From the NCBI RefSeq assembly GCF_006345805.1, contig NC_043002.1, positions 1,798,001 to 1,862,000 of the forward strand: 64,000 nt of DNA, read 5' to 3'. This DNA is from Octopus sinensis (taxonomy: Eukaryota). Below the pieces are notes generated by a model that saw nothing but the letters and a program-made list of their open reading frames with translations, was not told the DNA's origin and searched no databases. Below are positions 772 through 64,000 of this stretch, in pieces (position 1 is the stretch's first letter; every line of letters starts with the position of its first letter). A program made the translations under genes and the position numbers.

Positions 772-1638
772 TACGAGGTGTAGTCAAAAAGTTTCCCACC
801 TTTGGCCAAAAAACAACAACTAATATTTAAAACAAACTCACCATTTTGATTTAGTCCCCTTCAAAGTATTCGCCTTGGGCGTCTGCACACTGCTACAAGC
901 GTTCCTACCACTGCTGGAAACATTTCTAGAAATCCCTTTTTGTGATTCTGTAGAGCTGTGCTGTCCAGTTTTGTTTAATGTCCTGTGTTCACTCAAATCT
1001 TCTCCGTTTCAGTGATTTTTGAGCTTTGAGAATAGCTAAAAGTCACACGGAGCCAAGTCTGGGGAGTAGGAAGACTGACGAACAAGCTATGTGCTGTGCT
1101 TGACGAGGAATGCTTGGAAGATGTGGGCGGAGTCAGCGGGTGCGTTGTCATGGTGGAATTTCCAGTTCTTCGCTGCGCACAGGTCCGGTCGTTTTTGCCG
1201 CACAGCTTCACGAAGACGACGAAGAACCCGCAGGTAGTATTCTTTGTTAATTGTCTGACCTTGTGGTGCATATTCATGGCTCACTGTCCACTGAGGTGCG
1301 ACCGTCTTTGCACCGGTTGACCACTCCTTTATTTGTGTTTTTCCCAAAGTATCATCTCCAAAAGCCTTCTGAATCTTCTCGACGGCAGACTTTGATACAG
1401 TATCTTTTTCTTCAATGCTCTCGGTCATCTTGACTCAAAAAGAAAAAAATCGCACAGCATATTCTACACATCTGTATCTTCTCGCGCGTCACTGAGGGCG
1501 AAAGGCGCAACATACAGACACGAAGACTTTTGCGTGTGTTCAGGAAGGATGCGGCCACCTAGTACCCAAGTGGATTTTGCTCACGCATTATTTTGTGTAA
1601 ACAATTCAAGGTCGGATACATTCTAACTGTACCTCGCA
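772..1638 (-). mobile_element. Internally deleted mariner (Tc1/mariner) DNA transposon
   Basis: Imperfect ~29-bp TIRs (TACGAGGTGTAGTCAAAAAGTTTCCCACC at 772; reverse complement of the right end TGCGAGGTACAGTTAGAATGTATCCGACC). The minus strand encodes an HTH piece (IQKAFGDDTLGKTQIKEW), then HEYAPQGQTINKEYY...HHDNAP, and YSPDLAPCDF in a shifted frame. Confidence 0.9.
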
Positions 1639-2924: not shown

Positions 2925-3075
2925 CACAGAGGCAGTATTTCAGAAGGAGGGGGATAAGTCGGCTACACCGACCCCTTTGTTCAGCTGATACTTATTGTAT
3001 CGATCCCGAAACAAAATTGGTCACCGGTTAACGCTGAAGTCAAGCGATAACAGTTTGATAGGAAGTCCCGAGAAG
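2925..3075 (-). mobile_element. Degenerate SINE, family B fragment
   Basis: Resembles the reverse complement of the family B core seen at 45186 and 53500 (ATAAGTCGGCTACACCGACCCC...CTGATACTTATTGTATCGATCCCG). Confidence 0.55.
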
Positions 3076-3343
3076 GACTTTAATGCGTTCTCCGATTGCG
3101 TAACAATCGTGGGTGAAGCAACCTTGAAAAGGGTTGTAATGCGTTCTCAGGTGGTGCAACAATCGTATGTAAAGTGGTCCTAAAAAGGGCCATTTTTTTT
3201 CTTTTACACCGAAAGCAACGGAACTGTTGCAGTGAAATGTGAAACTCTGAAAGCAGAAGACAAACCTAGGTTGGACAAAGGAAAGGAAATACGGTTGAGG
3301 AAAGTTAGTAACTTTGAAAGCAGACTACAGTAGCAATCTCCTC

Positions 3344-16778: not shown

Positions 16779-16872
16779 TGACTACCGAGTAATGTAACAT
16801 ATTGTATAGATAAATTTCCTCTATTTACATAATATTGAGGTCTCTTTCTTTCTTTTGTTATCTTACCGTTTT

Positions 16873-16935
<63 letters not shown>

Positions 16936-16940
<5 letters not shown>

Positions 16941-17830
16941 TTAGATAAAACTTAGATATGTTTCGACCAAAGATTTGTCCGGGCCATGTCTAACTTAATA
17001 GCACCACCTGATAGGATTATTTGAATCCTGTTTAAGTCAAGTTTTGTTTATGGTCCATTCAAGTTGTGAGTTTTTGTTGGGTGAGTTGTATCCAATTATG
17101 GATCGCTTTTCTAGTATTCTTTCAAGGAATCTATCCAGACTCCGTTTAAAGTTGATGGGATCCTTTTCCTCTTTGATCTCTTTCGGGACAATGTTAAATA
17201 GGGCAGGGCCTGTTGAGGAAAAGAAATTATGTTGCAGTTTACATGTATGCTGTGATCTTGAATTAGGCAGGGGACGTATGGCCCGTGGTCCCAGTCTTGG
17301 ATGAACCTTGAAGCTAATGTTCAGGTTGTTTGGGAAAAGTTGGCGGTATATTCTCCGCATCGTACAAATGATGTACCGTTCACGGCGACGCTGGAGAGAG
17401 TAGAGTTTCAAGGCTTTAAGGCGATCCCAATAATCGTTTAGTGAGTGCCCTCTGGGGTGATTCAATCCTCGAGATGTTTTGTCTTGTATGGGAAGGCCAC
17501 AGTGGGCAGCAGTATTCGAGGTGTACAAAGGAGGAGAAAAGTGGTATGATAACACCTTGTTCTCTGGACCGGAAAGTTCTTAAGATCCAGGAACTTATCC
17601 TACAAGCTATATCGACATTCTTGCTGATGTGTGCACTCCAACTGAGATCGTTATCAACAATTACACCCAGGTCTCTGATATTGTTAGAGGCTGTGAGCGG
17701 TTCCCCTGAAGGAAGAGAGTATGGCTGTTTTAGTGAGGAATTTCTTCCAAAATGCATCAGCTCAAATTTTCCCTCGTTCTGTTGCATTTTGTTTCTGTCT
17801 GCCCATTGACTCACAGCATATAGATCAGAC
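16936..17830 (-). mobile_element. 5'-truncated CR1-like LINE (RT C-terminal region and 3' UTR)
   Basis: RDLGVIVDNDLSWSAH...WILRTFRSR...HLEYCCPLW, frameshift, then DYWDRLKALKLYSLQRRRERY...GPALFNIVP; tail of two AAAACTTAGAT repeats at 16936-16957. Confidence 0.92.
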
Positions 17831-18142: not shown

Positions 18143-18145
<3 letters not shown>

Positions 18146-18177
<32 letters not shown>

Positions 18178-19367
18178 TACCTATTTTTTCTATAAATCGT
18201 TGCATTGTTTACACACATGCTTTTGTTTACGAAACGTCGTAACTTGCAGCCCTGAACTCTATAGAAAGTATACAAAGCACGTGAAAAATGAACACAAAGA
18301 GAGACACGATATTGACTTGTGAACTTATGATATTTCTGGAAGCAGGACATTTCTGTTTGCAAAACGAAATACTGTGGACTTGCCAGCGAGATTACATGTT
18401 TTATATATTATTATTATTATTATTGTTGTTGTTGTTGTTCTTTTTCTTCTTCTTCTTCTTCTTCTTTTTCTTCTTCTTCTTCTTTTTCTTCTTCTTCTTC
18501 TTGTAATATAGTCCACAAAAAGCGTGGTGAAACACAGCTATTCAGGTGTTCCTGGCTGCAATATTAATTCATTTGGCCATTTCTCGAGTTATGTGCAGCG
18601 GTGGTGGTTCAGCTACTGGACTCGATGCAATCAATGTTTGAATGAACTCATTTGGAAAAAGACAGAAAGAATGAGAGGGGGAGGTAATTAACGACACTGT
18701 AAATGTAACCGTAGCTTCCGAATATAAATTAACATACATAAACCAACAGCTTAATGTTTATGATCTCACTTAATTTGGAAGCGATGATTTAAATACTGTA
18801 ATCTACGCTAAATCGTCCTGATAAATCATTTCGTGAAGCTGCCGATTATATCGACAGTCGAAATTTATTCGGCAGCCGTGGACAGGACCGTTGAGACAGG
18901 TCGCTTTTGAGCACTTCCTTTTGCTGTGGGAGCGCAAAATATGCTGAAACCAACGCCTTTGCAGCAACACATCCGAGTCAAGTTGGGTGTGCAATTAAGA
19001 TATGTATATGTGTGTGCGCGTGTGCGTGTGTGTGTGTATATATATTTAATAATATTATAGGATAACATTATTAATATATTAATTAATTAATTAATAAGTA
19101 TTAATTTTATCAAGTACGTTAGAAAATCAATTTTTAGGTGAATTATACAAAATTTTCTTTAATTATATACATAATTATGTATATAATTATAGAATATTTT
19201 ATATATAAAATACGAGTGGGTCCTCTCCCGATTTTGGCTTTTCAGTTTCTTGCCGACTACGAATAGGTAAAAATGTATATTTTTAATATAATAATATCAA
19301 CATTTATAAGTGTTGACCAAACTTTCTATGCCCTACACTCAAGACACAATGCTGCATTTTAAATCTT

Positions 19368-19412
<45 letters not shown>

Positions 19413-19923
19413 TATATATATGGTAAATTCCGGTATATTCTTTTTGCAACCCTTAATATGATTACTTGCTATCTACATCTGGTCAGACTGGAATTCAAAT
19501 CTTGTTAGAGGAACTTCAAGTGTTTACCACTGGTATATATGGTCTGTAGCCTATTCATAGAAAAGCATATCAGTCAAAAAAGAAGACGAAGAGTTAGTTG
19601 TTTAGAACAAGTGTAGTAGTATTCGTTACAGCTGTTTCAATATCATTCCCTCGCGAACGCCACCACGTAGAGATACAAATGATTAAAAGCCACAACGTCC
19701 GTACTAAGTTGTCCATCGCTGTATAGCCCGTGTGGCACCACAGATGCGCCTGGTGCTAGCCTGATGAGGTACCACTACGGGTCATTCATCCATGGCTGAA
19801 AGATGTTGTGGATCCTGTTCATTTGATTGTTGACGTGATGTCGTTCGAAACGTTATACTACTGAACTGATTGTGGTTGCATTAAACCTGTACCACTTTAA
19901 CGCTTCGCCTTCTTCCTTGACTT

Positions 19924-19961
<38 letters not shown>

Positions 19962-21155
19962 TACCTATTTTTTCTATAAATCGTTGCATTGTTTACACAC
20001 ATGCTTTTGTTTACGAAACGTCGTAACTTGCAGCCCTGAACTCTATAGAAAGTATACAAAGCACGTGAAAAATGAACACAAAGAGAGACACGATATTGAC
20101 TTGTGAACTTATGATATTTCTGGAAGCAGGACATTTCTGTTTGCAAAACGAAATACTGTGGACTTGCCAGCGAGATTACATGTTTTATATATTATTATTA
20201 TTATTGTTGTTGTTGTTGTTGTTCTTTTTCTTCTTCTTCTTCTTCTTCTTTTTCTTCTTCTTCTTCTTTTTCTTCTTCTTCTTCTTGTAATATAGTCCAC
20301 AAAAAGCGTGGTGAAACACAGCTATTCAGGTGTTCCTGGCTGCAATATTAATTCATTTGGCCATTTCTCGAGTTAAGTGCAGCGGTGGTGGTTCAGCTAC
20401 TGGACTCGATGCAATCAATGTTTGAATGAACTCATTTGGAAAAAGACAGAAAGAATGAGAGGGGGAGGTAATTAACGACACTGTAAATGTAACCGTAGCT
20501 TCCGAATATAAATTAACATTACATAAACCAACAGCTTAATGGTTTATGATCTCACTTAATTTGGAAGCGATGATTTAAATACTGTAATCTACGCTAAATC
20601 GTCCTGATAAATCATTTCGTGAAGCTGCCGATTATATCGACAGTCGAAATTTATTCGGCAGCCGTGGACAGGACCGTTGAGACAGGTCGCTTTTGAGCAC
20701 TTCCTTTTGCTGTGGGAGCGCAAAATATGCTGAAACCAACGCCTTTGCAGCAACACATCCGAGTCAAGTTGGGTGTGCAAATTAAGATATGTATATGTGT
20801 GTGCGCGTGTGCGTGTGTGTGTGTGTATATATATTTAATAATATTATAGGATAACATTATTAATATATTAATTAATTAATTAATAAGTATTAATTTTATC
20901 AAGTACGTTAGAAAATCAATTTTTAGGTGAATTATACAAAATTTTCTTTAATTATATACATAATTATGTATATAATTATAGAATATTTTATATATAAAAT
21001 ACGAGTGGGTCCTCTCCCGATTTTGGCTTTTCAGTTTCTTGCCGACTACGAATAGGTAAAAATGTATATTTTTAATATAATAATATCAACATTTATAAGT
21101 GTTGACCAAACTTTCTATGCCCTACACTCAAGACACAATGCTGCATTTTAAATCT

Positions 21156-21213
<58 letters not shown>

Positions 21214-21713
21214 TAAATTCCGGTATATTCTTTTTGCAACCCTTAATATGATTACTTGCTATCTACATCTGGTCAGACTGGAATTCAAATCTTGTTAGAG
21301 GAACTTCAAGTGTTTACCACTGGTATATATGGTCTGTAGCCTATTCATAGAAAAGCATATCAGTCAAAAAAGAAGACGAAGAGTTAGTTGTTTAGAACAA
21401 GTGTAGTAGTATTCGTTACAGCTGTTTCAATATCATTCCCTCGCGAACGCCACCACGTAGAGATACAAATGATTAAAAGCCACAACGTCCGTACTAAGTT
21501 GTCCATCGCTGTATAGCCCGTGTGGCACCACAGACGCGCCTGGTGCTAGCCTGATGAGGTACCACTACGGGTCATTCATCCATGGCTGAAAGATGTTGTG
21601 GATCCTGTTCATTTGATTGTTGACGTGATGTCGTTCGAAACGTTATACTACTGAACTGATTGTGGTTGCATTAAACCTGTACCACTTTAACGCTTCGCCT
21701 TCTTCCTTGACTT

Positions 21714-21746
<33 letters not shown>
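18146..21746. repeat. Tandem duplication of a ~1.79-kb unit bounded by (CA)n tracts
   Basis: 18177-19926 and 19961-21716 are near-identical; (CA)n at 18146, 19927 and 21717; duplicated ORFs offset by 1784-1786. Confidence 0.97.
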
Positions 21747-26800: not shown

Positions 26801-26992
26801 ATATTTTGGATTCTTTTTTAAAAACGTTTATCTATAATCCTATACTTCATTATATTATTACTATGTTTATATATTCATATATTCATATATTTGTATTTTT
26901 ATATGTAATTTTAATATATCAATATATGTTTTATATTGGACAATTTTTATCTTAATTACATCCGTACGTAAATTCCAACTATATATGAAGCT

Positions 26993-29900
26993 CTACGATC
27001 TACGACATATGAACGACAGTAGGAAGACAGCAGTCATCAACACCGAATTGAAAAGGCTGAACATCGACATTGCGGCGCTGCAAGAGACCAGGCTCGCCGC
27101 AGACGGCGTGCTACGGGAGAAGGACTACACCTTCTACTGGCAGGGGAGACCCGTCGAGGAGGCCCGCCAGCATGGCGTGGGGTTTGCCGTGAGGAACAGC
27201 TTGCTCCCTATGGCGATTCCTCCTTCAAATGGCTCAGAGCGCATCCTCACTCTTAACCTTGCAACATCAACGGGAAAGGTAAACATAATTAGTGCGTATG
27301 CCCCAACACTCCACTCTCCTCAGGAAATAAAAGACCGGTTCTATGAGGAGCTCGACGCCACCATCAGCCAGATACCAGGGTCGGAGCCCATTTTCCTTCT
27401 AGGCGACTTCAACGCAAAGGTGGGATCCGATCATGGGGCATGGCCAGATTGCCTTGGACGCTTTGACGTGGGGAAGATGAATGAGAATGGCCAGAGACTG
27501 TTGGAGCTTTGCTGTTACCGGAAACTCTGCGTTTCCAACACATTCTTCATGACTAAGCCACAACACCAGGTCTCATGGAGGCACCCAAGGTCCGGACACT
27601 GGCACCAACTGGACATGGTCATCACCCGGCGAGCCCACCTCGGCAGTGTGCTTCTCACACGCAGCTACCATAGTGCTGACTGTGATACAGACCACTCTAT
27701 GGTGTGCAGCAGGGTCCGATTGGCCCCAAAGAAAATCCACCGTCCCGTAGGGAAAAGCCGCCCACGCATCAACACCGCCAGGACAACCAACCCCGACCTC
27801 CGCTCGGAATTCACCAACCGCATGGAGGAGGCCCTTAAAGATCACGCAGCCACGTCCATCGAGGAGAGATGGCAGCTTATTCGCGACACCACTTGCAGAA
27901 TAGCCATGTCATCCCTAGGAAAGAGGGAGCGGAGAAATCAAGACTGGTTTGAAGCTCACCTGCCTGAGATGAAGCCTGTCATTGCTGCCAAGAGGGAAGC
28001 ACTGGTCAACTATAAGCGCGACCCATCAGAAAAGAACCTGGCTACTCTGAGAACAGCCAGAAGCGACGCCCAGAGGACGGCCAGACGTTGCGCCAACATC
28101 TACTGGCAGAACTTATGCCAGAACATCCAGTGCTGTGCTGACAGTGGTAACGTGAAAGGGATGTACGAGGAGATGAAGAAAGCATTCGGGCCCACTGTCA
28201 GCAAGGTTGCTCCACTGAAGTCCAGGGATGGCGAGGTCATCAAGGACCAAGCGAAGCAGATGGAGAGGTGGGTCGAGCATTACCAGAACCTCTACTCCAT
28301 TGAGAATGTGGTTACCAGGTCTGCCCTCGCCGGCATTCCTGCTCTGCCTGTCATGGAGGAGCTTGACCTGCCTCCAACAAAGGAAGAACTGAGCAAAGCA
28401 ATTGACTCACTCGCTCGGGGCAAGGCACCAGGGCAAGACGGCATCCCCGCAGAAGTCATCCAGTGCGGGAAGCCAGCCCTTCTGGGCCATCTCCACGAGC
28501 TGCTCTGTCAGTGCTGGGAGGAGGGCTCTGTCCCTAAGGATATGCATGACGCAGACATCATCACACTGTATAAAAACAAAGGGGTAGAAGCGACTGCAAT
28601 AATTACAGGGGCATATCACTGCTCAGCACTGTCGGTAAGGCATTTGCCAGGGTGGTCCTGAAGAGGTTACAAATACTTGCAGAGCGTGTGTACCCCGAGT
28701 CTCAGTCTGGCTTTAGGACAGAGAGGTCTACAATCGACATGATCTTCTCACTCAGGCAGCTTCAAGAAAAGAGTCGAGAACAGAGACAGCCCCTATACGT
28801 GGCCTTCATCGACCTGGCTAAGGCGTTCGACTCAGTCAGCAGGGAGGGGCTGTTTGCGCTCCTGGGTAGGATAGGTTGCCCTCCCAGACTGCTGAAACTC
28901 ATCACCTCCTTTCACGACGGTATGCAGGGAACAGTGCAGTTTGACGGATCGCCCTCGGAGTCGTTCCCCATCCAGAGTGGAGTGAAACAGGGTTGCGTTC
29001 TGGCGCCGACGCTCTTCGGAATTTTCTTCTCCCTTGTCCTGTCCTATGCCTTCAGAACGTCCGACGACGGAGTGTTCCTCCACACCAGGGCTGATGGTGG
29101 ATTGTTCAATCTTGCGCGCCTCAGAGCTAAGACCAAAGTCCGTCAGGTGCTGATCAGAGAGATCCTCTTTGCTGACGATGCCGCCCTAACATTACACAGC
29201 CAGCCGGGTCTCCAGAGGCTGGTCAGCTCCCTGACGGATGCCTGCCAAGAGTTCGGCCTTACCATCAGCCTGAAAAAGACAGAGATCATGGGCCAGGACG
29301 TCGGAGGGGTCCCCAGCATCAGTGTCGGCGACCACAGCTTGCAGGTGGTGAACGAGTTCACTTACCTGGGATCGACGGTCTCCAGCAGCCTGTCCCTCGA
29401 GCCGGAGCTGAACAGACGGATTGGGAAGGCTGCTGCTGCCATCGCTAAGCTCTCCAGGAGAGTGTGGGAAAACAACATGCTCACAATAACCACCAAGATC
29501 GCAGTGTACCGAGCCTGCGTGCTGAGCACCCTACTCTACGGCAGCGAGAGCTGGACGACATACACCCGGCAAGAATGCCGCCTCAGCGGCTTCCACATGC
29601 GGTGTCTTCGACGGATCCTTGGCATCTCCTGGAAGGACCGAGTACCAAACGGAGTCATCCTAGAACAGACTAATATGCCAAGCATGCATGCCCTCCTCGT
29701 GCGGAGACGACTGCGCTGGCTCGGACACGTCTGCCGCATGCAGGACGGTCGCATGCCTAAAGACATCCTGTACAGCGAACTCACCACGGGATCCCGACCC
29801 AAGTGACGTCCACAGCTACGATACAGGGATGTGTGCAAACGCGACCTGAGGACTGCCAACATCTGTGTGGACACGTGGGAGGAAACAGCTGCTGACCGCT

Positions 29901-30162
29901 CTGCCTGGCGTCGGACAGTGAGGAAAGGCGTTTCCATGGCTGAGGAAAGGAGAGCACAGCTGTGGTCGGACTGACGGGACAGGAGGAGGACAACTGCAGC
30001 AACACCCCACACGTACCCATCGATGTTCGTGTGCAGCAACTGTACCAAGGACTGCCACTCTAGAATTGGATTGTTCAGTCACAGCAGACGCTGCTCATCA
30101 TCGAAGTAGGCCCCACCCCTGGCGTGACCCATTTTCTATCAAGACAGACGGGAAAGAGAGAG
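26993..30162 (+). mobile_element. Near full-length RTE-clade LINE
   Basis: 10-bp TSD ATATGAAGCT at 26983-26992 and 30163-30172; (GA)n tail; EN and RT domains present; much more GC-rich than the flanks. Confidence 0.97.
26997..30109 (+). pseudogene. RTE ORF: APE endonuclease + reverse transcriptase + C-terminal CxxC/H motif, disrupted
   Basis: LQETR, YAPT, LGDFNAKVG, DTDHSMV; QSGFR, FIDLAKAFDSV, GVKQGCVLAPTLF, LFADD, YLGS; FVCSNCTKDCHSRIGLFSHSRRC*. Lesions: 1-bp loss near 28585, TGA at 29804, TGA near 29971, 1-bp loss near 29992; extreme N-terminus missing. Confidence 0.93.
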
Positions 30163-30193
30163 ATATGAAGCTTTTATATAAATATATATATTC

Positions 30194-43607: not shown

Positions 43608-44007
43608 TACTTTCTCTCGATGTTGAGATGTTATTGGTCGAAAATTGCAATCCGATGGTACAACGCGAAATTAGTTGAGTATTTCGGTTAATTATTAAGT
43701 TGCATTTCTATTATGCACCATTCCTCATTCATTTATTATCATTTACTTGACAACAAATGCACTTTATTGTTGTTATACAATCCTGGATTGACAGGTTTAA
43801 ATATCATTAATTCTTTAATTAATTTATACTGGTTAATTACTGAGGCCTTCTGTTAGTACTTCTCTTTAAGCACACCGACGGCCAAGTAATCGCATGAAGG
43901 GTTACTGAATTGATTGCCTGTATTTAAAATATTTCTACTGATAATGTGTTCAAATGAGTGCGTGTATGTGTATGCGCGCACACACATACTTACACACATG
44001 TCGTTTA

Positions 44008-44340
44008 TTTGTCTCAGTCATTAGACTGCGACCATGATGGTGTACCACCTTTAAGTGTTTATCCGCTTGAATCTACACCAATAATCTTTTTTTTAAGCCT
44101 AGGATTAATTCCAGCGAACATCTTCTTGCCAAAACGCTAAGTTAAGAGGACGTAAATGAAGCAACACTGGTTGTCAAGTGGTGCTGAGGACCAAAGCAGA
44201 CACTCACACACATACACGACGGGCTTCTTTTTGTTTCCCTCAACCTAATCCACTCAGCCCAGGGATACTGTCCAGTGTGCCAGCAGCGAGACCGATCCAG
44301 GAATTAGGTGGATGAAAAGCAAGTTTCTTATCAGACGGAC
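44008..44340 (-). mobile_element. Degenerate full-length SINE, family A
   Basis: Collinear with 45363-45810, including the internal (CA) tract and the CGACGGGCTTCTT junction. Confidence 0.7.
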
Positions 44341-45362: not shown

Positions 45363-45575
45363 TTCTCTTTACTCTTTTACTTGTTTCAGTCATTTGACTG
45401 CGGCCATGCTGGAGCACCGCTTTTAGTCGATCAAATCGACCCCGGAACTTATTCTTTGTAAGCCCAGTACTTATTCTATCGATCTCTTTTGCCGAACCGC
45501 TAAGTGGCGGGGACGTAGACACACCAGCATCGGTTGTCAAGCAATGCTAGGGGGACAAACACAGACACAGACACA

Positions 45576-45650
<75 letters not shown>

Positions 45651-45810
45651 TAAAACAGGCTTCTTTCAGTTTCCGTCTACCAAATCCACTCACAAGGCAT
45701 TGGTCGGCCCGGGGCTATGGCAGAAGACACTTGCCCAAGATGCCACGCAGTGGGACTGAACCCGCAACCATGTGGTTTGTTAGCAAGCTACTTACCACAC
45801 AGCCACGCCT
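45363..45810 (-). mobile_element. Full-length tRNA-derived SINE, family A, with internal microsatellite
   Basis: Minus strand A-box TGGCTGTGTGG, B-box GGTTCAGTCCC (45752-45762), internal (TA)n(TG)n, 3' domain and GTAAAAGAG-type tail. Confidence 0.92.
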
Positions 45811-55690: not shown

Positions 55691-56016
55691 AGCATCTTTA
55701 TTAGGCAGTTACATAGATAGAGAGAGAGAGACAGATAGATAGATACATAGATAGATAGACAGAAAGATAGGTAGATATCAAGGTGTGATATGTGCACAGA
55801 CACCACACGGTTGTATATATTCCAGTAAGATTTATATATATTACATATACGCATATACACACGTTTGCAGGGACACACACACACACATTATATAATATAT
55901 ATATATAATATATAATATATATATATATATATAATAAATATATATAATATATATAATAAATATATATATAATATATATATAGATATAATAAATATATATA
56001 ATATAATATATATATA

Positions 56017-59000
56017 TAAATGAAGTAGCGGGACGCCAAACGAGATCAATAAAATGACTTAGCGGTTCGCCAAACAAGAGTGATAAAATAACCTAGCGGT
56101 TCGCTGAACAAGATCGATAAAATAACATATTGGTTCGACAAATAAAATCGATAAAATGACTTCGCGGTTCGCTAAACTAGTTCGATAAAATGACCTAGCG
56201 GTTCGCCAAAGGAGTTCGATAAAATGACGTGGCGCTTCGCCGAACGAGATCGATAAAATGACTTAGCTGTTCGCCAAAGGAGACCAATAAAATGACGTAG
56301 CGATACGACAAAATGATGTAGCAGTTCGCCAAATAAGATCGATAATGTGAATTAGCGGTTCGCAAAACGAGATCGATAAAATGACTTAGTGGTTCGCCAA
56401 ACGAGATCGAATAAATGACCTAGCGCTTCGCCAAAAGAGATCGATAAAATGACGTAGCAGTTCGCCAAACGATCTCGAAAAAATGACTGAGTGGTTCGCC
56501 AAACAATTCGATAAAATGAACTAGCGGATCGCCAAATCAGATCGATAAAATGACGTAGCGGTTCGACAAACGAGTTCGATAAAATGAAGTATAGGTTCAC
56601 CAAACAAGATCAATAAAATGACCTAGTGTCTCGACAAACGAGATCGAATAGATGACTTAGCGGTTCGCCAAAGGAGATCAATAAAATGATGTAGCGATAC
56701 GCCAAACAAGGTTGACAAAATGATGTAGCAGTTCGCCAAATAAGATCGATAATGTGAATTAGCGGTTCGCAAAACGAGATCGATAAAATGACTTAGTGGT
56801 TCGCCAAACGAGATCGAATAAATGACCTAGCGCTTCGCCAAAAGAGATCGATAAAATGACGTAGCAGTTCGCCAAACGATCTCGAAAAAATGACTGAGTG
56901 GTTCGCCAAACAATTCGATAAAATGAACTAGCGGATCGCCAAATCAGATCGATAAAATGACGTACCGGTTCGACAAACGACTTCGGTAAAATTAAGTATA
57001 GGTTCACCAAACAATATCAATAAAATGACCTAGTGTTTCGAGAAACGAGATCGATAAAATCACGTAGCGGTTCGCCAAACGAGATCGATAAAATGACTTA
57101 GCGGTTCGTCAAACGAGATCGATAATAAGACTTAGCGTTTTGCCAAACGAGATCGATAAATTGACATAGAGGTTCATCAAACGAGATCGATAAAATGAGT
57201 TAGCGTTTCGCCAAACGAAATCGATGCAATGACGTAGCGGTTCGTCAAACGGGATCGATAAAATGACATAGCGGTTCGCCAAACGAGATCGATAAAATAA
57301 AGAAGCGGGTCGCCAAACGAGATCGATAAAATGACTAAGCAGTTCGTCAAACGAGAGCGATAAAATGAAGTAGCAGTTCACCATACGAGATCGATTAAAT
57401 GATTTAGCGTTTCAACAAATGTGATCGATAAAATGACTTAGCGGTTCGATAAACGAGATTGATAAAATGACGCAGCGGTTTGACAAACGAGATCGACAAA
57501 ATAACTTAGCAGTTTGCAAACCGATATCGATAAAATGGCCTAGTGGTTCACCAAACGATATCAATAAAATGAATTAGCGGTTCGCCAAACGAGATCGATA
57601 AAATGGCGTAGCGGACGCCACACAATATCGATAAAATGAATTAGCGGTTCGCCAAACGGGATCGATGAAATGACCTAGCGGTTAGTCAAAGAAATCGATA
57701 AAATGATGTAGCGGGTCACCAAACGAAATCGATGAAATGACGATAAAATGAATTAGATTGATAAAATGAATTAGCGGTTCGCGAAATGGGATCGATAAAA
57801 TGACCTAGCGGTTCGCCAAAGGTGTTCGATAAAATGACTTAGCGGTTCAACAATCGAGATCGATAAAATGATTCAGCGTTTCGCCAAACGAGATCGATAA
57901 AATGACTTACCGTTTCGCCAAACGAGATCGATATAATGACTTAGATTATTTAGACTTAAATGATTAGACTTAGACTAAAATTATTTAGCGGATCGCCAAA
58001 TGCATTCGATAAAATGAAGTAGCGGTTCACTAAATGAGCTCAATAAAATGAATTAGCGGTTCGCCAAACTACATCGATAAACTAACTTAACGGTTCGCCA
58101 AACGAGAACGATAAAATGACGTTGCGGTTAAACAAACGAGATCGACAAAATGACTTAGCGGTTCCCCAAACAAGACCGATAGAATGACGTAGCGGTTCGC
58201 CAAAGCAGATCGATAAAATGACTTAGCGGACCGAAAAATGAGATCGATAAAATGATTTAGCAGTTTGCCAAACGATATTAATAAAATGACGTAAACAAGA
58301 TCGACAAAATAACATAGCGGTTTGCCAAACGAGATCGATAAAATGAATTAGCGGTTCGCCAAACGAGATCGATAAAATGAGTTAGCGCTACGCCATACAA
58401 GATCGAAAAAATGATGCAGCGGTTCGTCAAAGAGATCGATAAAATGACTTACCGGTTCGCCAAACGAGATCGATAAAATGACGTAGCGGTTCGCCAAAGC
58501 AGATCGATAAAATGAAATAGTTGTTCGCCAAACGAGATTGATAAAATGACTTAGCGGTTTGCCAAACGAGTTCGCTAAAATGACGTAGCAATTTGCGAAA
58601 CGAGAACGATAAAATGACCTAGCGGGCCGCCAAAGGAGATCGATAAATTGACGTAACAGTTCGACAAACGATTTGAGAAAATGAGTTAGCGGCTCGTCAA
58701 ACAAGATCGATGAAATGAATTAGCGGTTCGCCAACGAGATAGATAAAATGATGTAGCGGCTCGCCAAACTAGATCGATAAAATGACTTAGCAGCTCGAAA
58801 AACGAGATCTATAAAATGACTAAGCGGTTCGCCAATTCGACATACGAATCGATAAAATGATTTGCGGTTCGCCAAACAAAATCGACAAAATAACATAGCT
58901 GTTTACCAAACGAGATCGATAAAATGAATTAGCGGTTCGCCAAACGAGATCGATAAAATGACTTAGCGCTACACCATACAAAATCGAAAAAAATGATGCA

Positions 59001-61521
59001 GCGGTTCGTCAAAGAGATCGATAAAATGACTTACCGGTTCGCCAAACGAGATCGATAAAATGATGTAGCGGTTCGCCAAAGCAGATCGATAAAATGAAGT
59101 AGTTGTTCGTTAAACAAGATCGATGAAATACATTAGCGGTTCGCCAACGAGATCGATAAAATGATGTAGCGGCTCGCCAAACGAGATCGATAAAATGACT
59201 TAGAGGCTCGGAGAACGAGATCTATAAAATGACTAAGCGGTTCGCCAAAGATATTGATAAAATGATGTAGCGATTCGACAAACGAAATCGATAAAATGAC
59301 TTGGCGGTTTGTCAAGCGTGATCGAAAAATGACTTAGCGGTTCGCCAAATGAGATCGACAAAATGACTTAGCGGTTCACCTAACGATATCGATGAAAGGA
59401 ATTAGTGGTTCGCCAAATGTTATCGATAAAATGGCATATCGTTTCGACAAACGGGATCGATAAAATGACGTAGCGGTTCGCCAAACGGGATCGATAAAAT
59501 GACATAGCCATTCGAAAAACGAGATCGTCAAAATGATATAGCGGTTCGCCAAACAAGGTCGACAAAATAAATTAGCGGTTTCACTAACGAGATCAATAAA
59601 ATGACTTAGCAGGTCGCCAAACATGATCGATAAAGTGACATAGAGGTTCGACAAACGAGATCGATAAAATGACTTAGTGATTCGCCAAACGAGATCGTTA
59701 AATTGACCTTGCAGTTTTCCAAAAGATATTGATAAAATGACCTAGTCGTTCGACAAACGAGATCAATAAAATGACTTAGCAGTTCGCCTTACGATATCAA
59801 TAAAATGAATTAGCGGTTCGCCAAACGAGATCGATAAAATGACTTGGCGGCTCGAAAAACAAGATCGATAAAATGGCCTAGCGGTTCGCCAAAATATATA
59901 GATAAAATGACTATAGCGGTTCGAAAAACGAGATTGATAGAATGATTTAGCGTTCCAACAAATGAGATCGAAAAATGACCTAGCATTTGGAGAAACGAGA
60001 TCGATAAAGTGAACTAGCGGTTAACCAAGCGATATCGACAAAATGACGTAGCAATTCACCAAACAAGTTTGATAAAATGACTTAGCGGTTCACCAAACGA
60101 GATCGACAAAATGAATTAGCGGTTTGCCAAAGGATATCGATAAAATGAACTAGCGGTTCGCCAAAGATAATCGATAAAATGACTTAGCAGTTCGCCAAAC
60201 GAGATCGATAAAATGACTTAGCGGTCCGCAAAACAAGGTCGATAAAATGACTTAGCGGTTCGAAAAAATAGATCGATAAAATGACCTAACTCTTCGCCAA
60301 AAGATATCAATAAAATGACGTAGCTGTTCGACAAACGAGATCGATAAAATGATGTAGAGGTTCCCCAAATATGGTCGACAAAATAACTTAGCGGTTTGAC
60401 AAACGAGATCGATAAAATGACGTAGTGGTTCGACAAACGAGATCATTAAAGTGAACTAGCGGTTCGCCAAAAGATATCGATAAAATGACATAGCGTTTCG
60501 CCAAATGTGATCGATAAAATGACTTAGCGGGTTCCCCAAATGAGGTCAATAAAATGGGCTAGTGGTTCGAGAAATGATATCGATAAAATGACGTAGCGGT
60601 TAGCCAAACCAGATCGATAAAATGAAGTAGTGGTTCGCCAAACGAGATCGATAAAATGTCGTAGAGTTTCGCGAAACTGGATCGATAAAATGCACTAGCG
60701 GGTCGCCAAAGAAGATCGATAAATTGGCGTAGCAGTTCGATAAACGGGATCGATTAAATGACCTAGGGGTTCGTCAAACGAGACCGATAAAATATGTAGC
60801 GGTTCGCCAAAGGAGATGGATAAAATGACTTAGCGGTTCGCCAACCGCGATCGAGAAAATGACCTAGCGGTTCGCCAAACGAGGTCGATAGAATTATCTA
60901 GCGGTTCGACAAGCGATTTCGATAAAATGACGTAGCGGTTCGCCAAATTTGATCGATAAAATGACTTAGCGGTTCGCCAAACGAGAACGATTATATAAAT
61001 TAGCGATTCGCCAAATGAAATCGATAAAATGACGTAGCGGTTAGCCAAACCAGATCGATAAAATGAAGTAGTGGTTCGCCAAACGAGATCGATAAAATGT
61101 CGTAGAGTTTCGCGAAACTGGATCGATAAAATGCACTAGCGGGTCGCCAAAGAAGATCGATAAATTGGCGTAGCAGTTCGATAAACGGGATCGATTAAAT
61201 GACCTAGGGGTTCGTCAAACGAGACCGATAAAATATGTAGCGGTTCGCCAAAGGAGATGGATAAAATGACTTAGCGGTTCGCCAACCGCGATCGAGAAAA
61301 TGACCTAGCGGTTCGCCAAACGAGGTCGATAGAATTATCTAGCGGTTCGACAAGCGATTTCGATAAAATGACGTAGCGGTTCGCCAAATTTGATCGATAA
61401 AATGACTTAGCGGTTCGCCAAACGAGAACGATTATATAAATTAGCGATTCGCCAAATGAAATCGATAAAATGACGTAGCGGTTCGCCAAAGGCGATCGAT
61501 GAAATTAATTAGCAGTTCGCC
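56017..61521 (+). repeat. 34-bp satellite array (~160 monomers) with higher-order repeats
   Basis: Consensus ACTTAGCGGTTCGCCAAACGAGATCGATAAAATG; period 34 (e.g. GCGG at 57067 and 57101). Confidence 0.98.
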
Positions 61522-62900
61522 AGTTTTCGACACAAATTTCCGGATGTTAGAAAATCCTCGGAAATTCCCATGCAGTTAGAATATCCTCGGAACTTTCCAT
61601 GCATTTTAAGTCGTAATTTCCCGGCAGTTAAAATATCCTGGGAACTTTCCATGCAGTTTTCGACCAAATTACCCGGAAGTTAGAAAATCCTCGGAACTTC
61701 CCATGAAATTTCCCGGAAGTTTAAAAAAACCCGGAACGTACCATGCAGTTTTCGACGAAAATTCCCGGAATATAGAAAACCCTCGGAACTTCCCAGGAAT
61801 TTTCGATCAACTTTCCCGAAAGTTAGAAAATCCTCGGAACTTTCCATGCATTTTTAGTCGCAATTTGCCGGGCGTTAGAATATCCTCGGAACTTTCCTGG
61901 AAGTTTTCGACGAAATTTCCCGGAAGTTAGAAAATCCTCGCAATTTCCCATGCAATTTTTGACGAAAATCCTCGGATCTCTCCATGCATTTTTAGCCGTA
62001 ATTTCCTCGGAACTTTCCTGGAAGTTTTCGATGAAATTTCCCGGATGTTAGAAAATCCTCGCAATTTCCCATGCAATTTCCCATGCATTTTTAGCCGTAA
62101 TTTCCGGGGTGTTAGAATATCCTCGGAACTTTCCGTGCAGTTTTCCACTAAATTTCCTGGAAGTTAGAAAATCCTCGGAACTTTCCTGGAAGTTATCGAT
62201 GAAACTTCCCGGAAGTTAGAAACCTCGGAACTTCCCATACGGTTTTAGTCTTAATTTCCCGTGAGTTTGAATGTACTCGGAACTTTCCATGCAATTTTTG
62301 TACCAAATTTCCCGGAAGTTAGAAAATCCTCGGAACTTCCCATACAGTTTCTCACGAAATTGCTGGATGTTAGAATATCCTCGGAACTTTCCATGCGGTT
62401 TTCCACCAAATTTTCCATAAGTCAAAAAATCCTCGGAACTTTCCTGGAAGTTTTCAACCTAATTCTCGGAAGTTAGAGAACCCTCGGAACTTCCCATGCT
62501 TTTTTCGACGAAAATTCCCGGAACGTCCTAGGAATTTTCGATCAAATTTCCCGGAAGTTAGAAAATCCTCGGAACTTTCCATGCATTTTTAGTTGTTTCT
62601 TTTGGGACTTTCCTCGGAACTTCCTATGCAATTTTCGACCAAATTTCCCGGAAGTTAGAAAATCCTCAGAACTTCCCATGCAGTTTTCCACGAAATTTCC
62701 CGGAAGTTTCAATATCCTCGGAACTTTCCATGCAATTTTTTACTAAATTTCCAAGAATTTAGAAAATCCTCGGAGCTTTCCTGGAAATTTTCGACGAAAT
62801 TTCCCGGAAGTTAGAAAATCATCGGAACTTTCCTGGAAATTTTCGACGAAATTTTCCGGAAGTTAGAAACCCTCGGAACTACCCTTGCATTTTTCGTCAG
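61522..62900 (+). repeat. 52-bp satellite array (~25 degenerate monomers)
   Basis: Consensus AAATTTCCCGGAAGTTAGAAAATCCTCGGAACTTTCCATGCAGTTTTCGACG; monomer starts at 62641, 62693, 62745, 62797 and 62849. Confidence 0.95.
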
Positions 62901-62959
62901 GAAGTTTCTCGATCTTCTTGAAACGGATCCGCTAATCTGCTCGCACGAATGCAGTGAAA

Positions 62960-64000
62960 TCTCTAGATGGTACTTTCAACGGTTATTTTGTCGGTGCTGA
63001 GATGATTTTGGTTCTTTATAGTTTTGAAGATAACCTTAAGGACCAACTTGTGCCTCCATGTATACCTGTTCAATGCTAATGAGCAGTTGGACAGAATATG
63101 TTTTAGTGTATCGACCTTTCCACATTTGCAGATGTCATTCTCTGACTAGATGGCAAAATTTTATAAGATGAACGAATCAGGAAACTCAACCGAGATGTCA
63201 TCCACGTTCACATCTCATCCAAACTTATCTTCCTCTCAACAACATGTTCTTCCCATCTCGTCATCTAACCTTGATGAACACATCGGATCAAATGAAGCTC
63301 TCTTCTCTCTGCTTCTCTTGTTTTGACGCTGATGCTAACAACAGATCTGCGTTCACTCCACATCATGCTTGCAAACGGTCTGAACTGATCCGCGCCAAAA
63401 CCAAGTCCCTTCTGTGTTGCTCCCACCATATCTCTATGTATAAGAGAAGACAAGATGTCGTCAGTTTCTGCTTCTGCTTTCCACTTCCTGGCTGTTTTCA
63501 CCTCTGGTGGGTTACGCCTGATTTCCATATCCTTTGATTCTCTCAGCATCATGACCGTCCGTCCCAGCTTATATATTTCGACTATTGATACTATTGGTAG
63601 CTGCAACGAACGTCTTTTACGATAAAGAGCTGAACTGTTCAACATACGAGGTAGGCCTAGCCACTTTCTAATGAACACATTACATTTTTGTTCAATGATT
63701 TCAACTCGTGACAATGCTACCTCGTATATTAAAAGTGGCCACTCAAGTCGCGGGTACAAGCCGAACTACAAGCACCAAATTTTATAGTTACCTGGTAACT
63801 TGGAATTATCAATCGCTGATAACCCAGCCTCGGCCTGTTTCATAATTTCAATCCCTCGACTTCTGCCTGACAATGTTCCAGCGTATACTCGCCCCAATCT
63901 CTTGACGGGCTCTTCCTTGACTGTTGGAATGCTTTCTTCAGATATTCGAAATTTAAATTCTTTCTGCACTCCCTTAACAAATGTCAGACTACGCGAATTT
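62960..64000 (-). mobile_element. HERO-like RLE-clade non-LTR retrotransposon relic (continues beyond window)
   Basis: IPTVKEEPVKRLGRVY...SKLPGNYKIWCL; PRLEWPLLIYEV...KWLGLPR...LQLP...VKTARKWKAE...QG; then CKCGKVDTLKHILSNC...RYTWRH. Ends before the PD-D/ExK nuclease. Confidence 0.86.

What the first reader, a model, noticed from the sequence alone, without database searches (positions are those of the whole stretch)
56017..61521. 5.5-kb satellite amplified from a 34-bp internal segment of the resident SINE
Monomer ACTTAGCGGTTCGCCAAACGAGATCGATAAAATG versus the reverse complement of 45472-45505, ACTTAGCGGTTCGGCAAAAGAGATCGATAGAATA: 30/34 identical, no gaps, and the match equals one monomer length. 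TE-derived satellites are known in general; I know of no description of this one. Transcripts of the array could pair with antisense SINE RNA or titrate a factor binding this SINE domain.
Basis: partly seen in the sequence, partly recalled or inferred. Interest (0 to 1): 0.84.

Follow-up and report, generated by a model that had tools for sequence, protein, structure and literature searches.

The report
Octopus tandem array born from a SINE
A 5.5-kb block of about 162 head-to-tail copies of a 34-base unit in the Octopus sinensis genome really is a copy-and-expand derivative of a short piece of the common octopus SINE, an ordinary kind of junk-DNA birth that had been documented in detail mainly for reptiles.

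Summary
Window 56018-61522 is an uninterrupted 34-bp tandem array of about 162 units.

The unit matches a SINE copy at 45472-45505 (minus strand) at 30/34 without gaps. The best match in 30 dinucleotide shuffles was 21-23/34. Against a majority consensus of 13 SINE copies it still matches 29/34.

The window is Octopus sinensis GCA_006345805.1, CM016864.1:1,798,001-1,862,000. The array lies about 1.85 Mb from one end of that chromosome record.

The homology spans one unit and no more. SINE copies much older (JC 0.3-0.5) than the array units (JC 0.13-0.16) already carry the segment in SINE context. The SINE-to-array direction is therefore favoured, but it is inferred.

- **What is missing:** the array has no SINE flanks, no higher-order repeat and no intermediate units.
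- **How it evolves:** it decays with a GC-to-AT bias, and three recent block duplications show unequal exchange or slippage.
- **Function:** nothing supports one. The longest exact word shared with any SINE copy is 15 nt or less, and the RNA fold is unremarkable.
- **Abundance:** genome-wide abundance could not be measured. No further array was seen in 166 kb of other O. sinensis DNA.

Verdict: a new member of a known kind (TE/SINE-derived tandem array), of modest interest.

The parts
56018..61522 (+). 34-bp tandem array of about 162 units, consensus ACTTAGCGGTTCGCCAAACGAGATCGATAAAATG. The + strand is the SINE sense strand.
   Evidence: Identity is 85% to the consensus and 78% pairwise. There is no higher-order repeat and no decay of identity with distance. 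The edge units are the most degraded (76%).
60579..61483 (+). Very recent block duplication inside the array: a 441-bp block (13 units) present 2.05 times at 100% identity.
   Evidence: 464-nt perfect self-match at offset 441. It could also be an assembly artefact.
56316..57027 (+). Older block duplication inside the array: 56316-56620 versus 56723-57027, offset 407 bp, 98.4% identical.
   Evidence: A third pair, 58312-58514 versus 58893-59096, is about 97% identical.
45363..45810 (-). Full-length copy of the octopus SINE. It has a head with pol III box-like motifs (45656-45810), an internal (TA)n(TG)n microsatellite (45555-45652) and a tail (45363-45554). It is a family member, not the progenitor of the array.
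   Evidence: JC 0.056 from the majority consensus.
45472..45505 (-). The 34-nt SINE segment homologous to one array unit (tail positions about 50-83).
43991..44256 (-). Old, diverged copy of the same SINE (about 69% identical to the majority consensus). It still carries the segment with the SINE-type G at diagnostic positions 14 and 30; positions 19 and 34 also lack the array's bases.
   Evidence: JC 0.40.
55889..56019 (.). AT-rich microsatellite, (TA)n with interruptions, forming the left border of the array. A short (CA)n precedes it. No SINE sequence is present.
61523..62896 (+). Second, unrelated tandem array of about 26 units of 52 bp (AAATTTCCCGGAAGTTAGAAAATCCTCGGAACTTCCCATGCAGTTTTCGACG). 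It abuts the 34-bp array directly.
   Evidence: no similarity to the 34-mer; no copy in the other loci.
62950..64000 (-). Decayed, truncated retroelement fragment forming the right border. The ORF remnants correspond to the region just C-terminal of the RT domain in RT proteins of 1000-1100 aa.
   Evidence: the long homologues have RVT_1 at about 300-600, and one has zf-RVT. Pfam finds nothing in the fragment itself.

Best explanation
This is a non-coding 34-bp tandem array, minisatellite-sized in unit and satellite-like in length. Its unit descends from one 34-nt stretch in the 3' half of the abundant octopus SINE, downstream of the SINE's internal microsatellite. One already mutated SINE copy, or an early array, carried four private substitutions (C14, C19, A30, G34). 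That stretch became tandemly duplicated and then expanded by replication slippage or unequal exchange to more than 160 units. The main expansion happened roughly 35-45 million years ago. This date assumes a star-like burst and the octopus TE clock of about 0.0036 substitutions per site per million years. Since then the units have drifted independently with a GC-to-AT bias. Occasional multi-unit block duplications have kept the array growing. The array sits beside an unrelated 52-bp array in the distal 1.5% of an O. sinensis chromosome record. It most likely has no sequence-specific function.

Shown: the array, the homology, its one-unit extent, the decay pattern, the block duplications and the genomic position.

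Inferred: the direction of origin, the mechanism of the first duplication, the date and the neutrality.
For: The 30/34 match is far above chance. The match to the SINE family consensus is 29/34. All 12-13 SINE copies have the SINE-type base at positions 14, 19, 30 and 34, and none has the array's base.

Homology is limited to one unit. BLAST hits cover tail positions 50-82, and the rotation scan agrees. That is what a duplicated segment predicts by construction. A capture of satellite DNA by the SINE would not predict it.

SINE copies span JC 0.056-0.49 from their consensus, and the oldest already contain the segment in SINE context. Array units are at JC 0.164, or 0.134 without CpG sites. The clock comes from PMC13282606.

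The decay looks neutral. Conservation is A 0.94, T 0.86, G 0.86, CpG 0.83 and C 0.74. G>A, C>T and C>A are the leading substitutions. Pairwise identity is 78% at every distance and there is no higher-order repeat.

Unequal exchange or slippage is seen directly: a perfect 441-bp x2 block, plus pairs at 98.4% and about 97% identity. The SINE consensus itself has an old direct repeat of about 22 nt (AGAATAAGTACTAGG / AGAATAAGTCCTGGG) that overlaps the end of the segment and runs on just past it, so the region is duplication-prone.

The window equals CM016864.1:1,798,001-1,862,000 of O. sinensis.
Against: No SINE sequence flanks the array on either side. The usual hallmark of SINE-derived satellites, a terminal unit running on into the SINE, is therefore absent at this locus.

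No unit carries more than one SINE-type diagnostic base, so no ancestral intermediates survive. No SINE copy with 2-4 tandem units was found among 13 copies.

The SINE ages rest on one mixed-subfamily consensus, which inflates distances for members of other subfamilies. The array date assumes a single burst. Only about 230 kb of one genome could be examined.
Confidence: 0.72

Rival explanations
1. Common third source. The unit was amplified not from a SINE copy but from another element that shares this module, for example the 3' UTR of the SINE's partner LINE or a related non-autonomous element. In that case SINE and array are cousins rather than parent and child.
For: SINE 3' parts commonly derive from partner LINEs (established knowledge, summarised in PMC10702118). 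The array has no SINE flanks. The four diagnostic bases of the array are found in none of the 13 SINE copies. One copy in L001 begins its homology almost exactly at the start of the segment, inside otherwise unrelated sequence.
Against: In 64 kb plus 166 kb of O. sinensis DNA, every other occurrence of the segment lies inside a recognisable SINE tail. None of the LINEs in the window carries it. The L001 case is most simply a 5'-truncated SINE insertion, and other truncation points occur too.
Confidence: 0.12
2. Reverse direction. A 34-bp satellite came first, and the SINE master copy picked up one unit of it while its body was being assembled.
For: SINE bodies are of unknown origin in many families. 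MITEs are thought to have captured pre-existing tandem repeats in some cases (PMC12628747). Nothing at this locus polarises the change directly.
Against: The captured piece would have to be one unit long to within about 1 nt. SINE copies at JC 0.3-0.5 already have the segment, while array units coalesce at JC 0.13-0.16. SINE-type bases at the four diagnostic sites are rare in the array (1, 7, 4 and 11 of about 162 units) and never co-occur.
Confidence: 0.06
3. Functional array. The repeat acts through its sequence, for example as a sink for a DNA-binding protein (each unit holds a GATCGATA core, close to the insect DRE/BEAF type of motif), as a source of RNAs that pair with SINE transcripts, or as structural subterminal heterochromatin.
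For: The array holds 76 intact ATCGATA and 91 TCGATA sites. The CpG at unit positions 25-26 is somewhat better kept (0.90) than the other three CpGs (0.72-0.88). The array lies in the distal 1.5% of the chromosome record next to a second array. This is the kind of place where satellites cluster.
Against: Conservation per site is explained by base type. There are no exact consensus units and pairwise identity is 78%. The longest exact word shared with any SINE copy is 15 nt or less. There is no Rfam match and no unusual fold. The motif resemblance is recalled from memory and was not tested. No expression or chromatin data were available.
Confidence: 0.07
4. Chance resemblance between an unrelated minisatellite and the SINE.
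For: Only 34 nt are compared, and the unit is AT-rich at its 3' end.
Against: The match is 30/34 against a shuffle maximum of 23/34, over 34 rotations and both strands of about 57 kb. It persists against 13 independent or semi-independent SINE copies.
Confidence: 0.01

Closest known systems
SINE-derived satellites (sSats) of squamate reptiles (Vassetzky, Kosushkin and Ryskov 2023, PMC10702118)
   Same: These are tandem arrays whose unit is an internal portion of a tRNA-related SINE. Arrays reach hundreds of units (up to 320-950 there, about 162 here). They prefer distal chromosome regions and are not strongly homogenised.
   Different: The squamate unit is longer (67 nt in snakes, 34 nt here). 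Most squamate arrays end in a longer unit that runs on to the SINE terminus, and this array has no SINE flank. Long squamate arrays are 89-94% homogeneous, against 78% here. The squamate arrays occur at tens to thousands of loci, whereas only one locus is known here. The host here is a mollusc, and that paper left open whether sSats exist outside squamates.
Transposon-derived or transposon-borne tandem arrays of molluscs, e.g. satDNA-like arrays carried by Helentron non-autonomous elements in the Pacific oyster (PMC7492417) and pearl/MITE-type elements (reviewed in PMC12628747)
   Same: Both are in molluscs and both link a mobile element to a tandem array. They share the general route of an internal TE segment being duplicated and expanded by slippage or unequal exchange.
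   Different: Those arrays sit inside DNA transposons or Helitron-like elements and are spread by them. Here the source is a retroposed SINE, and no terminal repeats or element ends flank the array. The 2025 review does not mention SINEs at all.
SINEs with short (about 30-nt) internal duplications, and minisatellite (VNTR) regions inside composite retroposons such as the human SVA element (from my own knowledge; the first is also noted in PMC10702118)
   Same: The unit size is tens of bases, and the unit arises by duplication of a piece of a non-autonomous retroposon.
   Different: In those cases the repeats stay inside a mobile element and are copied with it. This array is a free-standing 5.5-kb block with no element around it.
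Classical satellite DNA
   Same: It is a long, uninterrupted head-to-tail array of non-coding units lying next to another array in a distal chromosome region.
   Different: Multi-locus abundance, heterochromatin association and concerted evolution were not shown. Homogenisation is weak.

Membership tests
SINE-derived satellite (sSat sensu PMC10702118) | Tandem head-to-tail array whose unit is homologous to part of a SINE present in the same genome | tested here: met
   The match is 30/34 to a window copy and 29/34 to the majority consensus of 13 copies. The shuffle maximum is 23/34.
SINE-derived satellite (sSat sensu PMC10702118) | A terminal unit that extends into the adjoining SINE sequence up to the SINE end (the common but not universal pattern) | tested here: not met
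   The left border is an AT microsatellite and the right border is the 52-bp array. There are no SINE head or tail hits within 2 kb on either side.
SINE-derived satellite (sSat sensu PMC10702118) | Several to many loci per genome, including short arrays of 2-8 units | not testable with these tools
   No whole octopus genome can be searched. There were no further arrays and no SINE copies with duplicated segments in 166 kb from six other O. sinensis loci. Scans of the metagenome, prokaryote-genome and viral collections were empty.
SINE-derived satellite (sSat sensu PMC10702118) | Source SINE older than or as old as the array | tested here: inconclusive
   SINE copies lie at JC 0.056-0.49 and array units at JC 0.13-0.16. 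This fits the order SINE first. However, it rests on a mixed-subfamily consensus and on one species.
Classical satellite DNA | Long arrays (kilobases or more) of tandem non-coding units | tested here: met
   The array is 5,505 bp, about 162 units, with only 72 indel bases.
Classical satellite DNA | Concerted evolution: units more alike within an array, or near each other, than expected from their age | tested here: not met
   Pairwise identity is 78% at all distances, no unit equals the consensus exactly and there is no higher-order repeat. Only three local block duplications were found.
Classical satellite DNA | High genomic abundance and heterochromatic (centromeric or subtelomeric) location | not testable with these tools
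   Only the position is known: about 1.85 Mb from the start of the 120.5-Mb record CM016864.1.
Minisatellite / VNTR | Unit of about 10-100 bp in an array of 0.5 to tens of kb at a single locus | tested here: met
   The unit is 34 bp and the array 5.5 kb. Length polymorphism between individuals was not testable.
tRNA-derived SINE (source element; possibly the CORE-SINE OR1 group named for octopus in PMC4824008) | Short non-coding dispersed repeat with a pol III promoter-bearing head, found as many diverged and 5'-truncated copies | tested here: met
   Thirteen copies at seven loci have varied 5' truncation points. By eye, the head reads box A-like TGGCTGTGTGG and box B-like GGTTCAGTCCC.
tRNA-derived SINE (source element; possibly the CORE-SINE OR1 group named for octopus in PMC4824008) | Head recognisably derived from a tRNA; CORE central domain | tested here: inconclusive
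   ARAGORN finds no tRNA. Rfam gives no tRNA match even at E<=1. The TTGGGCAAGT stretch looks like the start of the CORE domain, but only from memory. No OR1 or CORE consensus was on hand to align.

The most novel reading that the evidence does not exclude
The 34-mer is not a one-off locus. It would be a family of SINE-derived arrays shared by Octopus species and concentrated near chromosome ends. That would make it the first documented SINE-derived satellite outside squamate reptiles, in an invertebrate. It would also show that the SINE-to-satellite route is a general property of SINE-rich genomes. A bolder add-on is that its roughly 90 TCGATA cores per array bind a BED-finger or insulator-type protein.
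Probability: 0.25. Interest if true: 0.5.

Novelty: new member of a known kind. Interest (0 to 1): 0.3.

Why it matters
Direct links between interspersed SINEs and tandem satellites are thinly documented. The 2023 squamate study judged the older claimed examples inconclusive and left open whether such satellites exist elsewhere. A 2025 review of transposon-derived satellites never mentions SINEs.

A clean case in an octopus extends the phenomenon to invertebrates. SINEs make up about 11.6% of the closely related O. vulgaris genome. The case also gives a concrete probe, the 34-mer with four diagnostic bases, for tracing when and how often a SINE fragment turns into an array across cephalopod genomes.

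On its own, as a single decayed locus with no sign of function, it is a modest addition to repeat annotation rather than a surprise.

Tried and rejected
1. **External DNA scans.** I scanned for the unit and the SINE segment in the JGI metagenome contigs (two patterns), the GTDB genome contigs and IMG/VR. All returned nothing, as expected for collections without cephalopod genomes.

2. **Translated array as a protein query.** I searched the open reverse-strand reading of the array against the 5.8-billion-protein set, hoping to catch ORFs called on other arrays. There were no hits. Exact look-ups of the in-array ORF and of the LINE ORF also found nothing on record.

3. **Third protein search.** A second LINE fragment as query gave only contigs of about 1 kb of unknown origin. 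P0005 turned out to be an unrelated organism with no SINE.

4. **Array inside a larger mobile element.** There are no terminal inverted or direct repeats, and the flanks share no similarity with each other or with other loci. The idea is rejected.

5. **Array as a LINE 3' UTR repeat.** The adjacent retroelement ORF is on the opposite strand and is truncated inside its coding region. The idea is rejected.

6. **A relationship between the 34-bp and 52-bp units.** The alignment score is below the shuffle mean. The idea is rejected.

7. **Higher-order repeat structure.** There is none. The small rise at lags 12-13 is caused by two block duplications.

8. **Ancestral, SINE-like units at the array edges.** None were found.

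9. **Structured RNA or a known RNA family.** Rfam gave nothing at gathering thresholds and only microsatellite noise at E<=1. The fold z-score is +1.0.

10. **Literature.** Sequence strings and the topics octopus satellite or satellitome gave no description of this repeat.
Full report
**What is there.** Tandem Repeats Finder reports one continuous period-34 array at 56018-61522. The period-68 and period-102 rows are multiples of the same array. It needs only 24 inserted and 48 deleted bases. Units are on average 85.3% identical to the consensus and 77.7% identical to each other. No unit equals the consensus. Identity does not depend on the distance between units, and there is no higher-order repeat. 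The first and last ten units are the most degraded, at about 76%.

**The SINE match.** The minus strand of 45363-45810 is a complete short interspersed element. It has a head with pol III box-like motifs, an internal (TA)n(TG)n microsatellite and a tail of about 190 nt.
- BLAST of this tail against the window lights up 82 places in the array, nearly all covering tail positions 50-82.
- Ungapped, the unit matches the reverse complement of 45472-45505 at 30/34. This is the best match of any rotation on either strand outside the array.
- In 30 dinucleotide-preserving shuffles of the remaining ~57 kb, the best match was 21-23/34. Chance is excluded.

**Where the window comes from, and the true SINE consensus.**
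- The window's LINE ORF is 95% identical to an Octopus sinensis protein.
- Fetching the loci of that protein's cluster members showed that L005 equals window 17210-60240 at 100% over 43,031 bp.
- The window is therefore O. sinensis GCA_006345805.1, CM016864.1:1,798,001-1,862,000. The array lies about 1.85 Mb from the start of a 120.5-Mb chromosome record.
- The other six loci (166 kb) plus the window yielded 13 SINE copies covering the segment, or part of it.
- Their majority consensus reads ...CCCCGTC ACTTAGCGGTTCGGCAAAAGAGACCGATAGAATA AGTACTAGGCTTAC....
- The array consensus matches it at 29/34. At unit positions 14, 19, 30 and 34 every informative SINE copy has a non-array base (G in 12 of 13, A, G, and A or T), while the array has C, C, A and G. 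Position 24 varies among SINE copies (T 4, C 6, A 2).

**Direction of origin.** Three observations favour SINE to array.
- First, homology is one unit long to within a base. Shifting the frame by -1, 0 or +1 keeps 30 matches and further shifts lose them. The SINE flanks (CCCCGTC on the 5' side, AGTACT on the 3' side) do not resemble the neighbouring unit. A duplicated segment predicts this by construction. A SINE that captured satellite DNA does not.
- Second, SINE copies range from JC 0.056 to 0.49 from their consensus. The old copies are window 43991-44190, L001 4996-5190, L002, L006 and L003. They already hold the segment in SINE context, mostly with SINE-type diagnostic bases and never with the array's. 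The array units sit at JC 0.164 from their consensus, or 0.134 without CpG sites.
- Third, SINE-type bases at the four diagnostic sites are rare in the array (1, 7, 4 and 11 units) and never co-occur.
- These are inferences. The SINE distances come from one mixed-subfamily consensus, and the array shows no direct trace of its birth. It has no SINE flank on either side, no ancestral-type unit and no SINE copy with two or more units among the 13.
- The SINE copy at 45.4 kb is intact, on the opposite strand and 10.5 kb away. It is a family member, not the progenitor.

**How it grew and how it evolves.**
- The array contains three multi-unit duplications of different ages. A 441-bp block (13 units) is present 2.05 times at 100% identity (60579-61483). 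A 9-unit block is duplicated at 98.4% (56316-56620 versus 56723-57027). A 6-unit block is duplicated at about 97% (58312-58514 versus 58893-59096).
- These show unequal exchange or slippage acting on blocks. The perfect one could also be an assembly artefact.
- The substitution spectrum is led by G>A, C>T and C>A. Conservation by base is A 0.94, T 0.86, G 0.86, CpG sites 0.83 and other C 0.74. This is decay towards the AT-rich background (36% GC), with no CpG hypermutability and no protected motif.
- The TE clock used for octopus is JC 0.09 at about 25 My and 0.2 at about 56 My (PMC13282606). On that clock the unit divergence corresponds to roughly 37-46 My. This would predate the O. vulgaris / O. 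bimaculoides split of 13-33 My cited there, so orthologous arrays are predicted in those species.
- The SINE consensus itself carries an old direct repeat of about 22 nt that overlaps the end of the segment and runs on just past it. This suggests that this part of the element is duplication-prone.

**Surroundings.**
- On the left the array starts straight out of an AT-rich microsatellite at 55889-56019.
- On the right it abuts a second tandem array of 52-bp units at 61523-62896, with no spacer. That array is unrelated to the 34-mer and has no other copy in the window or in the other loci.
- Beyond it lies a decayed minus-strand retroelement fragment. Its 164-aa ORF has 910 relatives. In the long relatives it aligns just after an RVT_1 domain, and one also has zf-RVT. 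Pfam sees nothing in the fragment itself.
- No terminal repeats enclose the two arrays, so they are not the interior of a recognisable mobile element.
- A RefSeq model, LOC115212842, spans window 27210-50240. It is built on LINE ORFs, and the array lies 5.8 kb beyond it.

**Function.** Nothing points to one.
- The longest exact word shared by the array and any SINE copy is 10-15 nt. This is short for small-RNA cross-targeting.
- A trimer RNA folds no better than shuffles, z = +1.0.
- Rfam finds nothing.
- The forward strand is closed in all frames. The reverse strand opens only where unit position 3 is not T, giving one spurious 118-aa ORF.
- The GATCGATA core recalls insect DRE/BEAF-type sites. 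This is memory, not a test, and the core is no better kept than base composition predicts.

**Comparison with what is known.**
- The closest described kind is the SINE-derived satellites of squamates (PMC10702118). They share an internal SINE portion as the unit, hundreds of units, a distal chromosome bias and limited homogenisation.
- They differ from this array in unit length (67 nt against 34 nt), in usually ending in a unit that runs on into the SINE (absent here), in higher homogeneity (89-94% against 78%) and in many loci per genome (unknown here).
- Mollusc precedents link satellites to Helentron and MITE-type DNA elements, not to SINEs (PMC7492417, PMC12628747).
- I found no paper describing octopus satellites or this repeat. 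The recent O. vulgaris repeat annotation does not discuss satellites.

**Verdict.**
- It is unproven as to direction and as to 'satellite' status, and unsupported as to function.
- It is a new member of a known kind, and interest is modest.

Noticed in passing
window 61523-62896: A second tandem array of about 26 units of 52 bp abuts the 34-bp array directly. It is unrelated to the 34-bp array. It has no other copy in the window or in 166 kb of other O. sinensis loci. Its unit contains the palindromic TTCCCGGAA (10 intact copies). Its origin is unknown.
   Followed up: partly
window 18143-21746: A block of about 1.8 kb (18143-19956) is tandemly duplicated at 19927-21746 with 99.3% identity. 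The duplication includes its microsatellites, so it is a recent segmental tandem duplication.
   Followed up: partly
window 26985-30166 and 27210-50240: There is a near-intact non-LTR retrotransposon (endonuclease ORF 26985-28661, RT ORF 28652-29806) that is 96.6% identical to a copy in L001. The RefSeq gene model LOC115212842 (XP_036359362.1) spanning 27210-50240 appears to be built on these transposon ORFs.
   Followed up: partly
window 62950-64000 (minus strand): A decayed retroelement fragment lies here, with stops and frame changes. It corresponds to the part just after the RT domain of RT proteins of 1000-1100 aa that show no N-terminal AP-endonuclease domain in Pfam. It is cut off where the 52-bp array begins.
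   Followed up: partly
L001 109-3266 (O. sinensis CM016873.1, last 19 kb of the record): A (TTAGGG)n stretch at 3017-3266 sits next to a 2.9-kb array of a 15-bp unit (TTCAGGGGCAGGTAA, about 196 copies) close to the end of a chromosome record. This is a candidate telomere-associated satellite.
   Followed up: no
L001 13000-19133: A tandem macro-repeat of about 1.75 kb is made of SINE pieces and long TA/TG microsatellites. One SINE piece (16814-16953) starts its homology almost exactly at the start of the 34-nt segment, inside otherwise unrelated sequence.
   Followed up: partly
SINE tail consensus; window 45430-45480 minus strand: The SINE itself carries an old internal direct repeat of about 22 nt (AGAATAAGTACTAGG / AGAATAAGTCCTGGG) that overlaps the end of the 34-nt segment and runs on just past it. 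One subfamily (L001 15305-15481 and its copies) has a 17-nt deletion in the same region. This part of the element seems prone to slippage.
   Followed up: no
window 56018-61522 versus the rest of the window: The CpG observed/expected ratio is 2.2 in the array and 0.85 in the rest of the window. The four CpGs per unit decay no faster than other C/G sites. This suggests the region is not methylated in the germ line.
   Followed up: no
window 1087-1428 (minus strand): A short ORF has a partial mariner-type transposase DDE match (Pfam Transposase_1, E = 7e-6). It is a remnant of a Tc1/mariner element.
   Followed up: no
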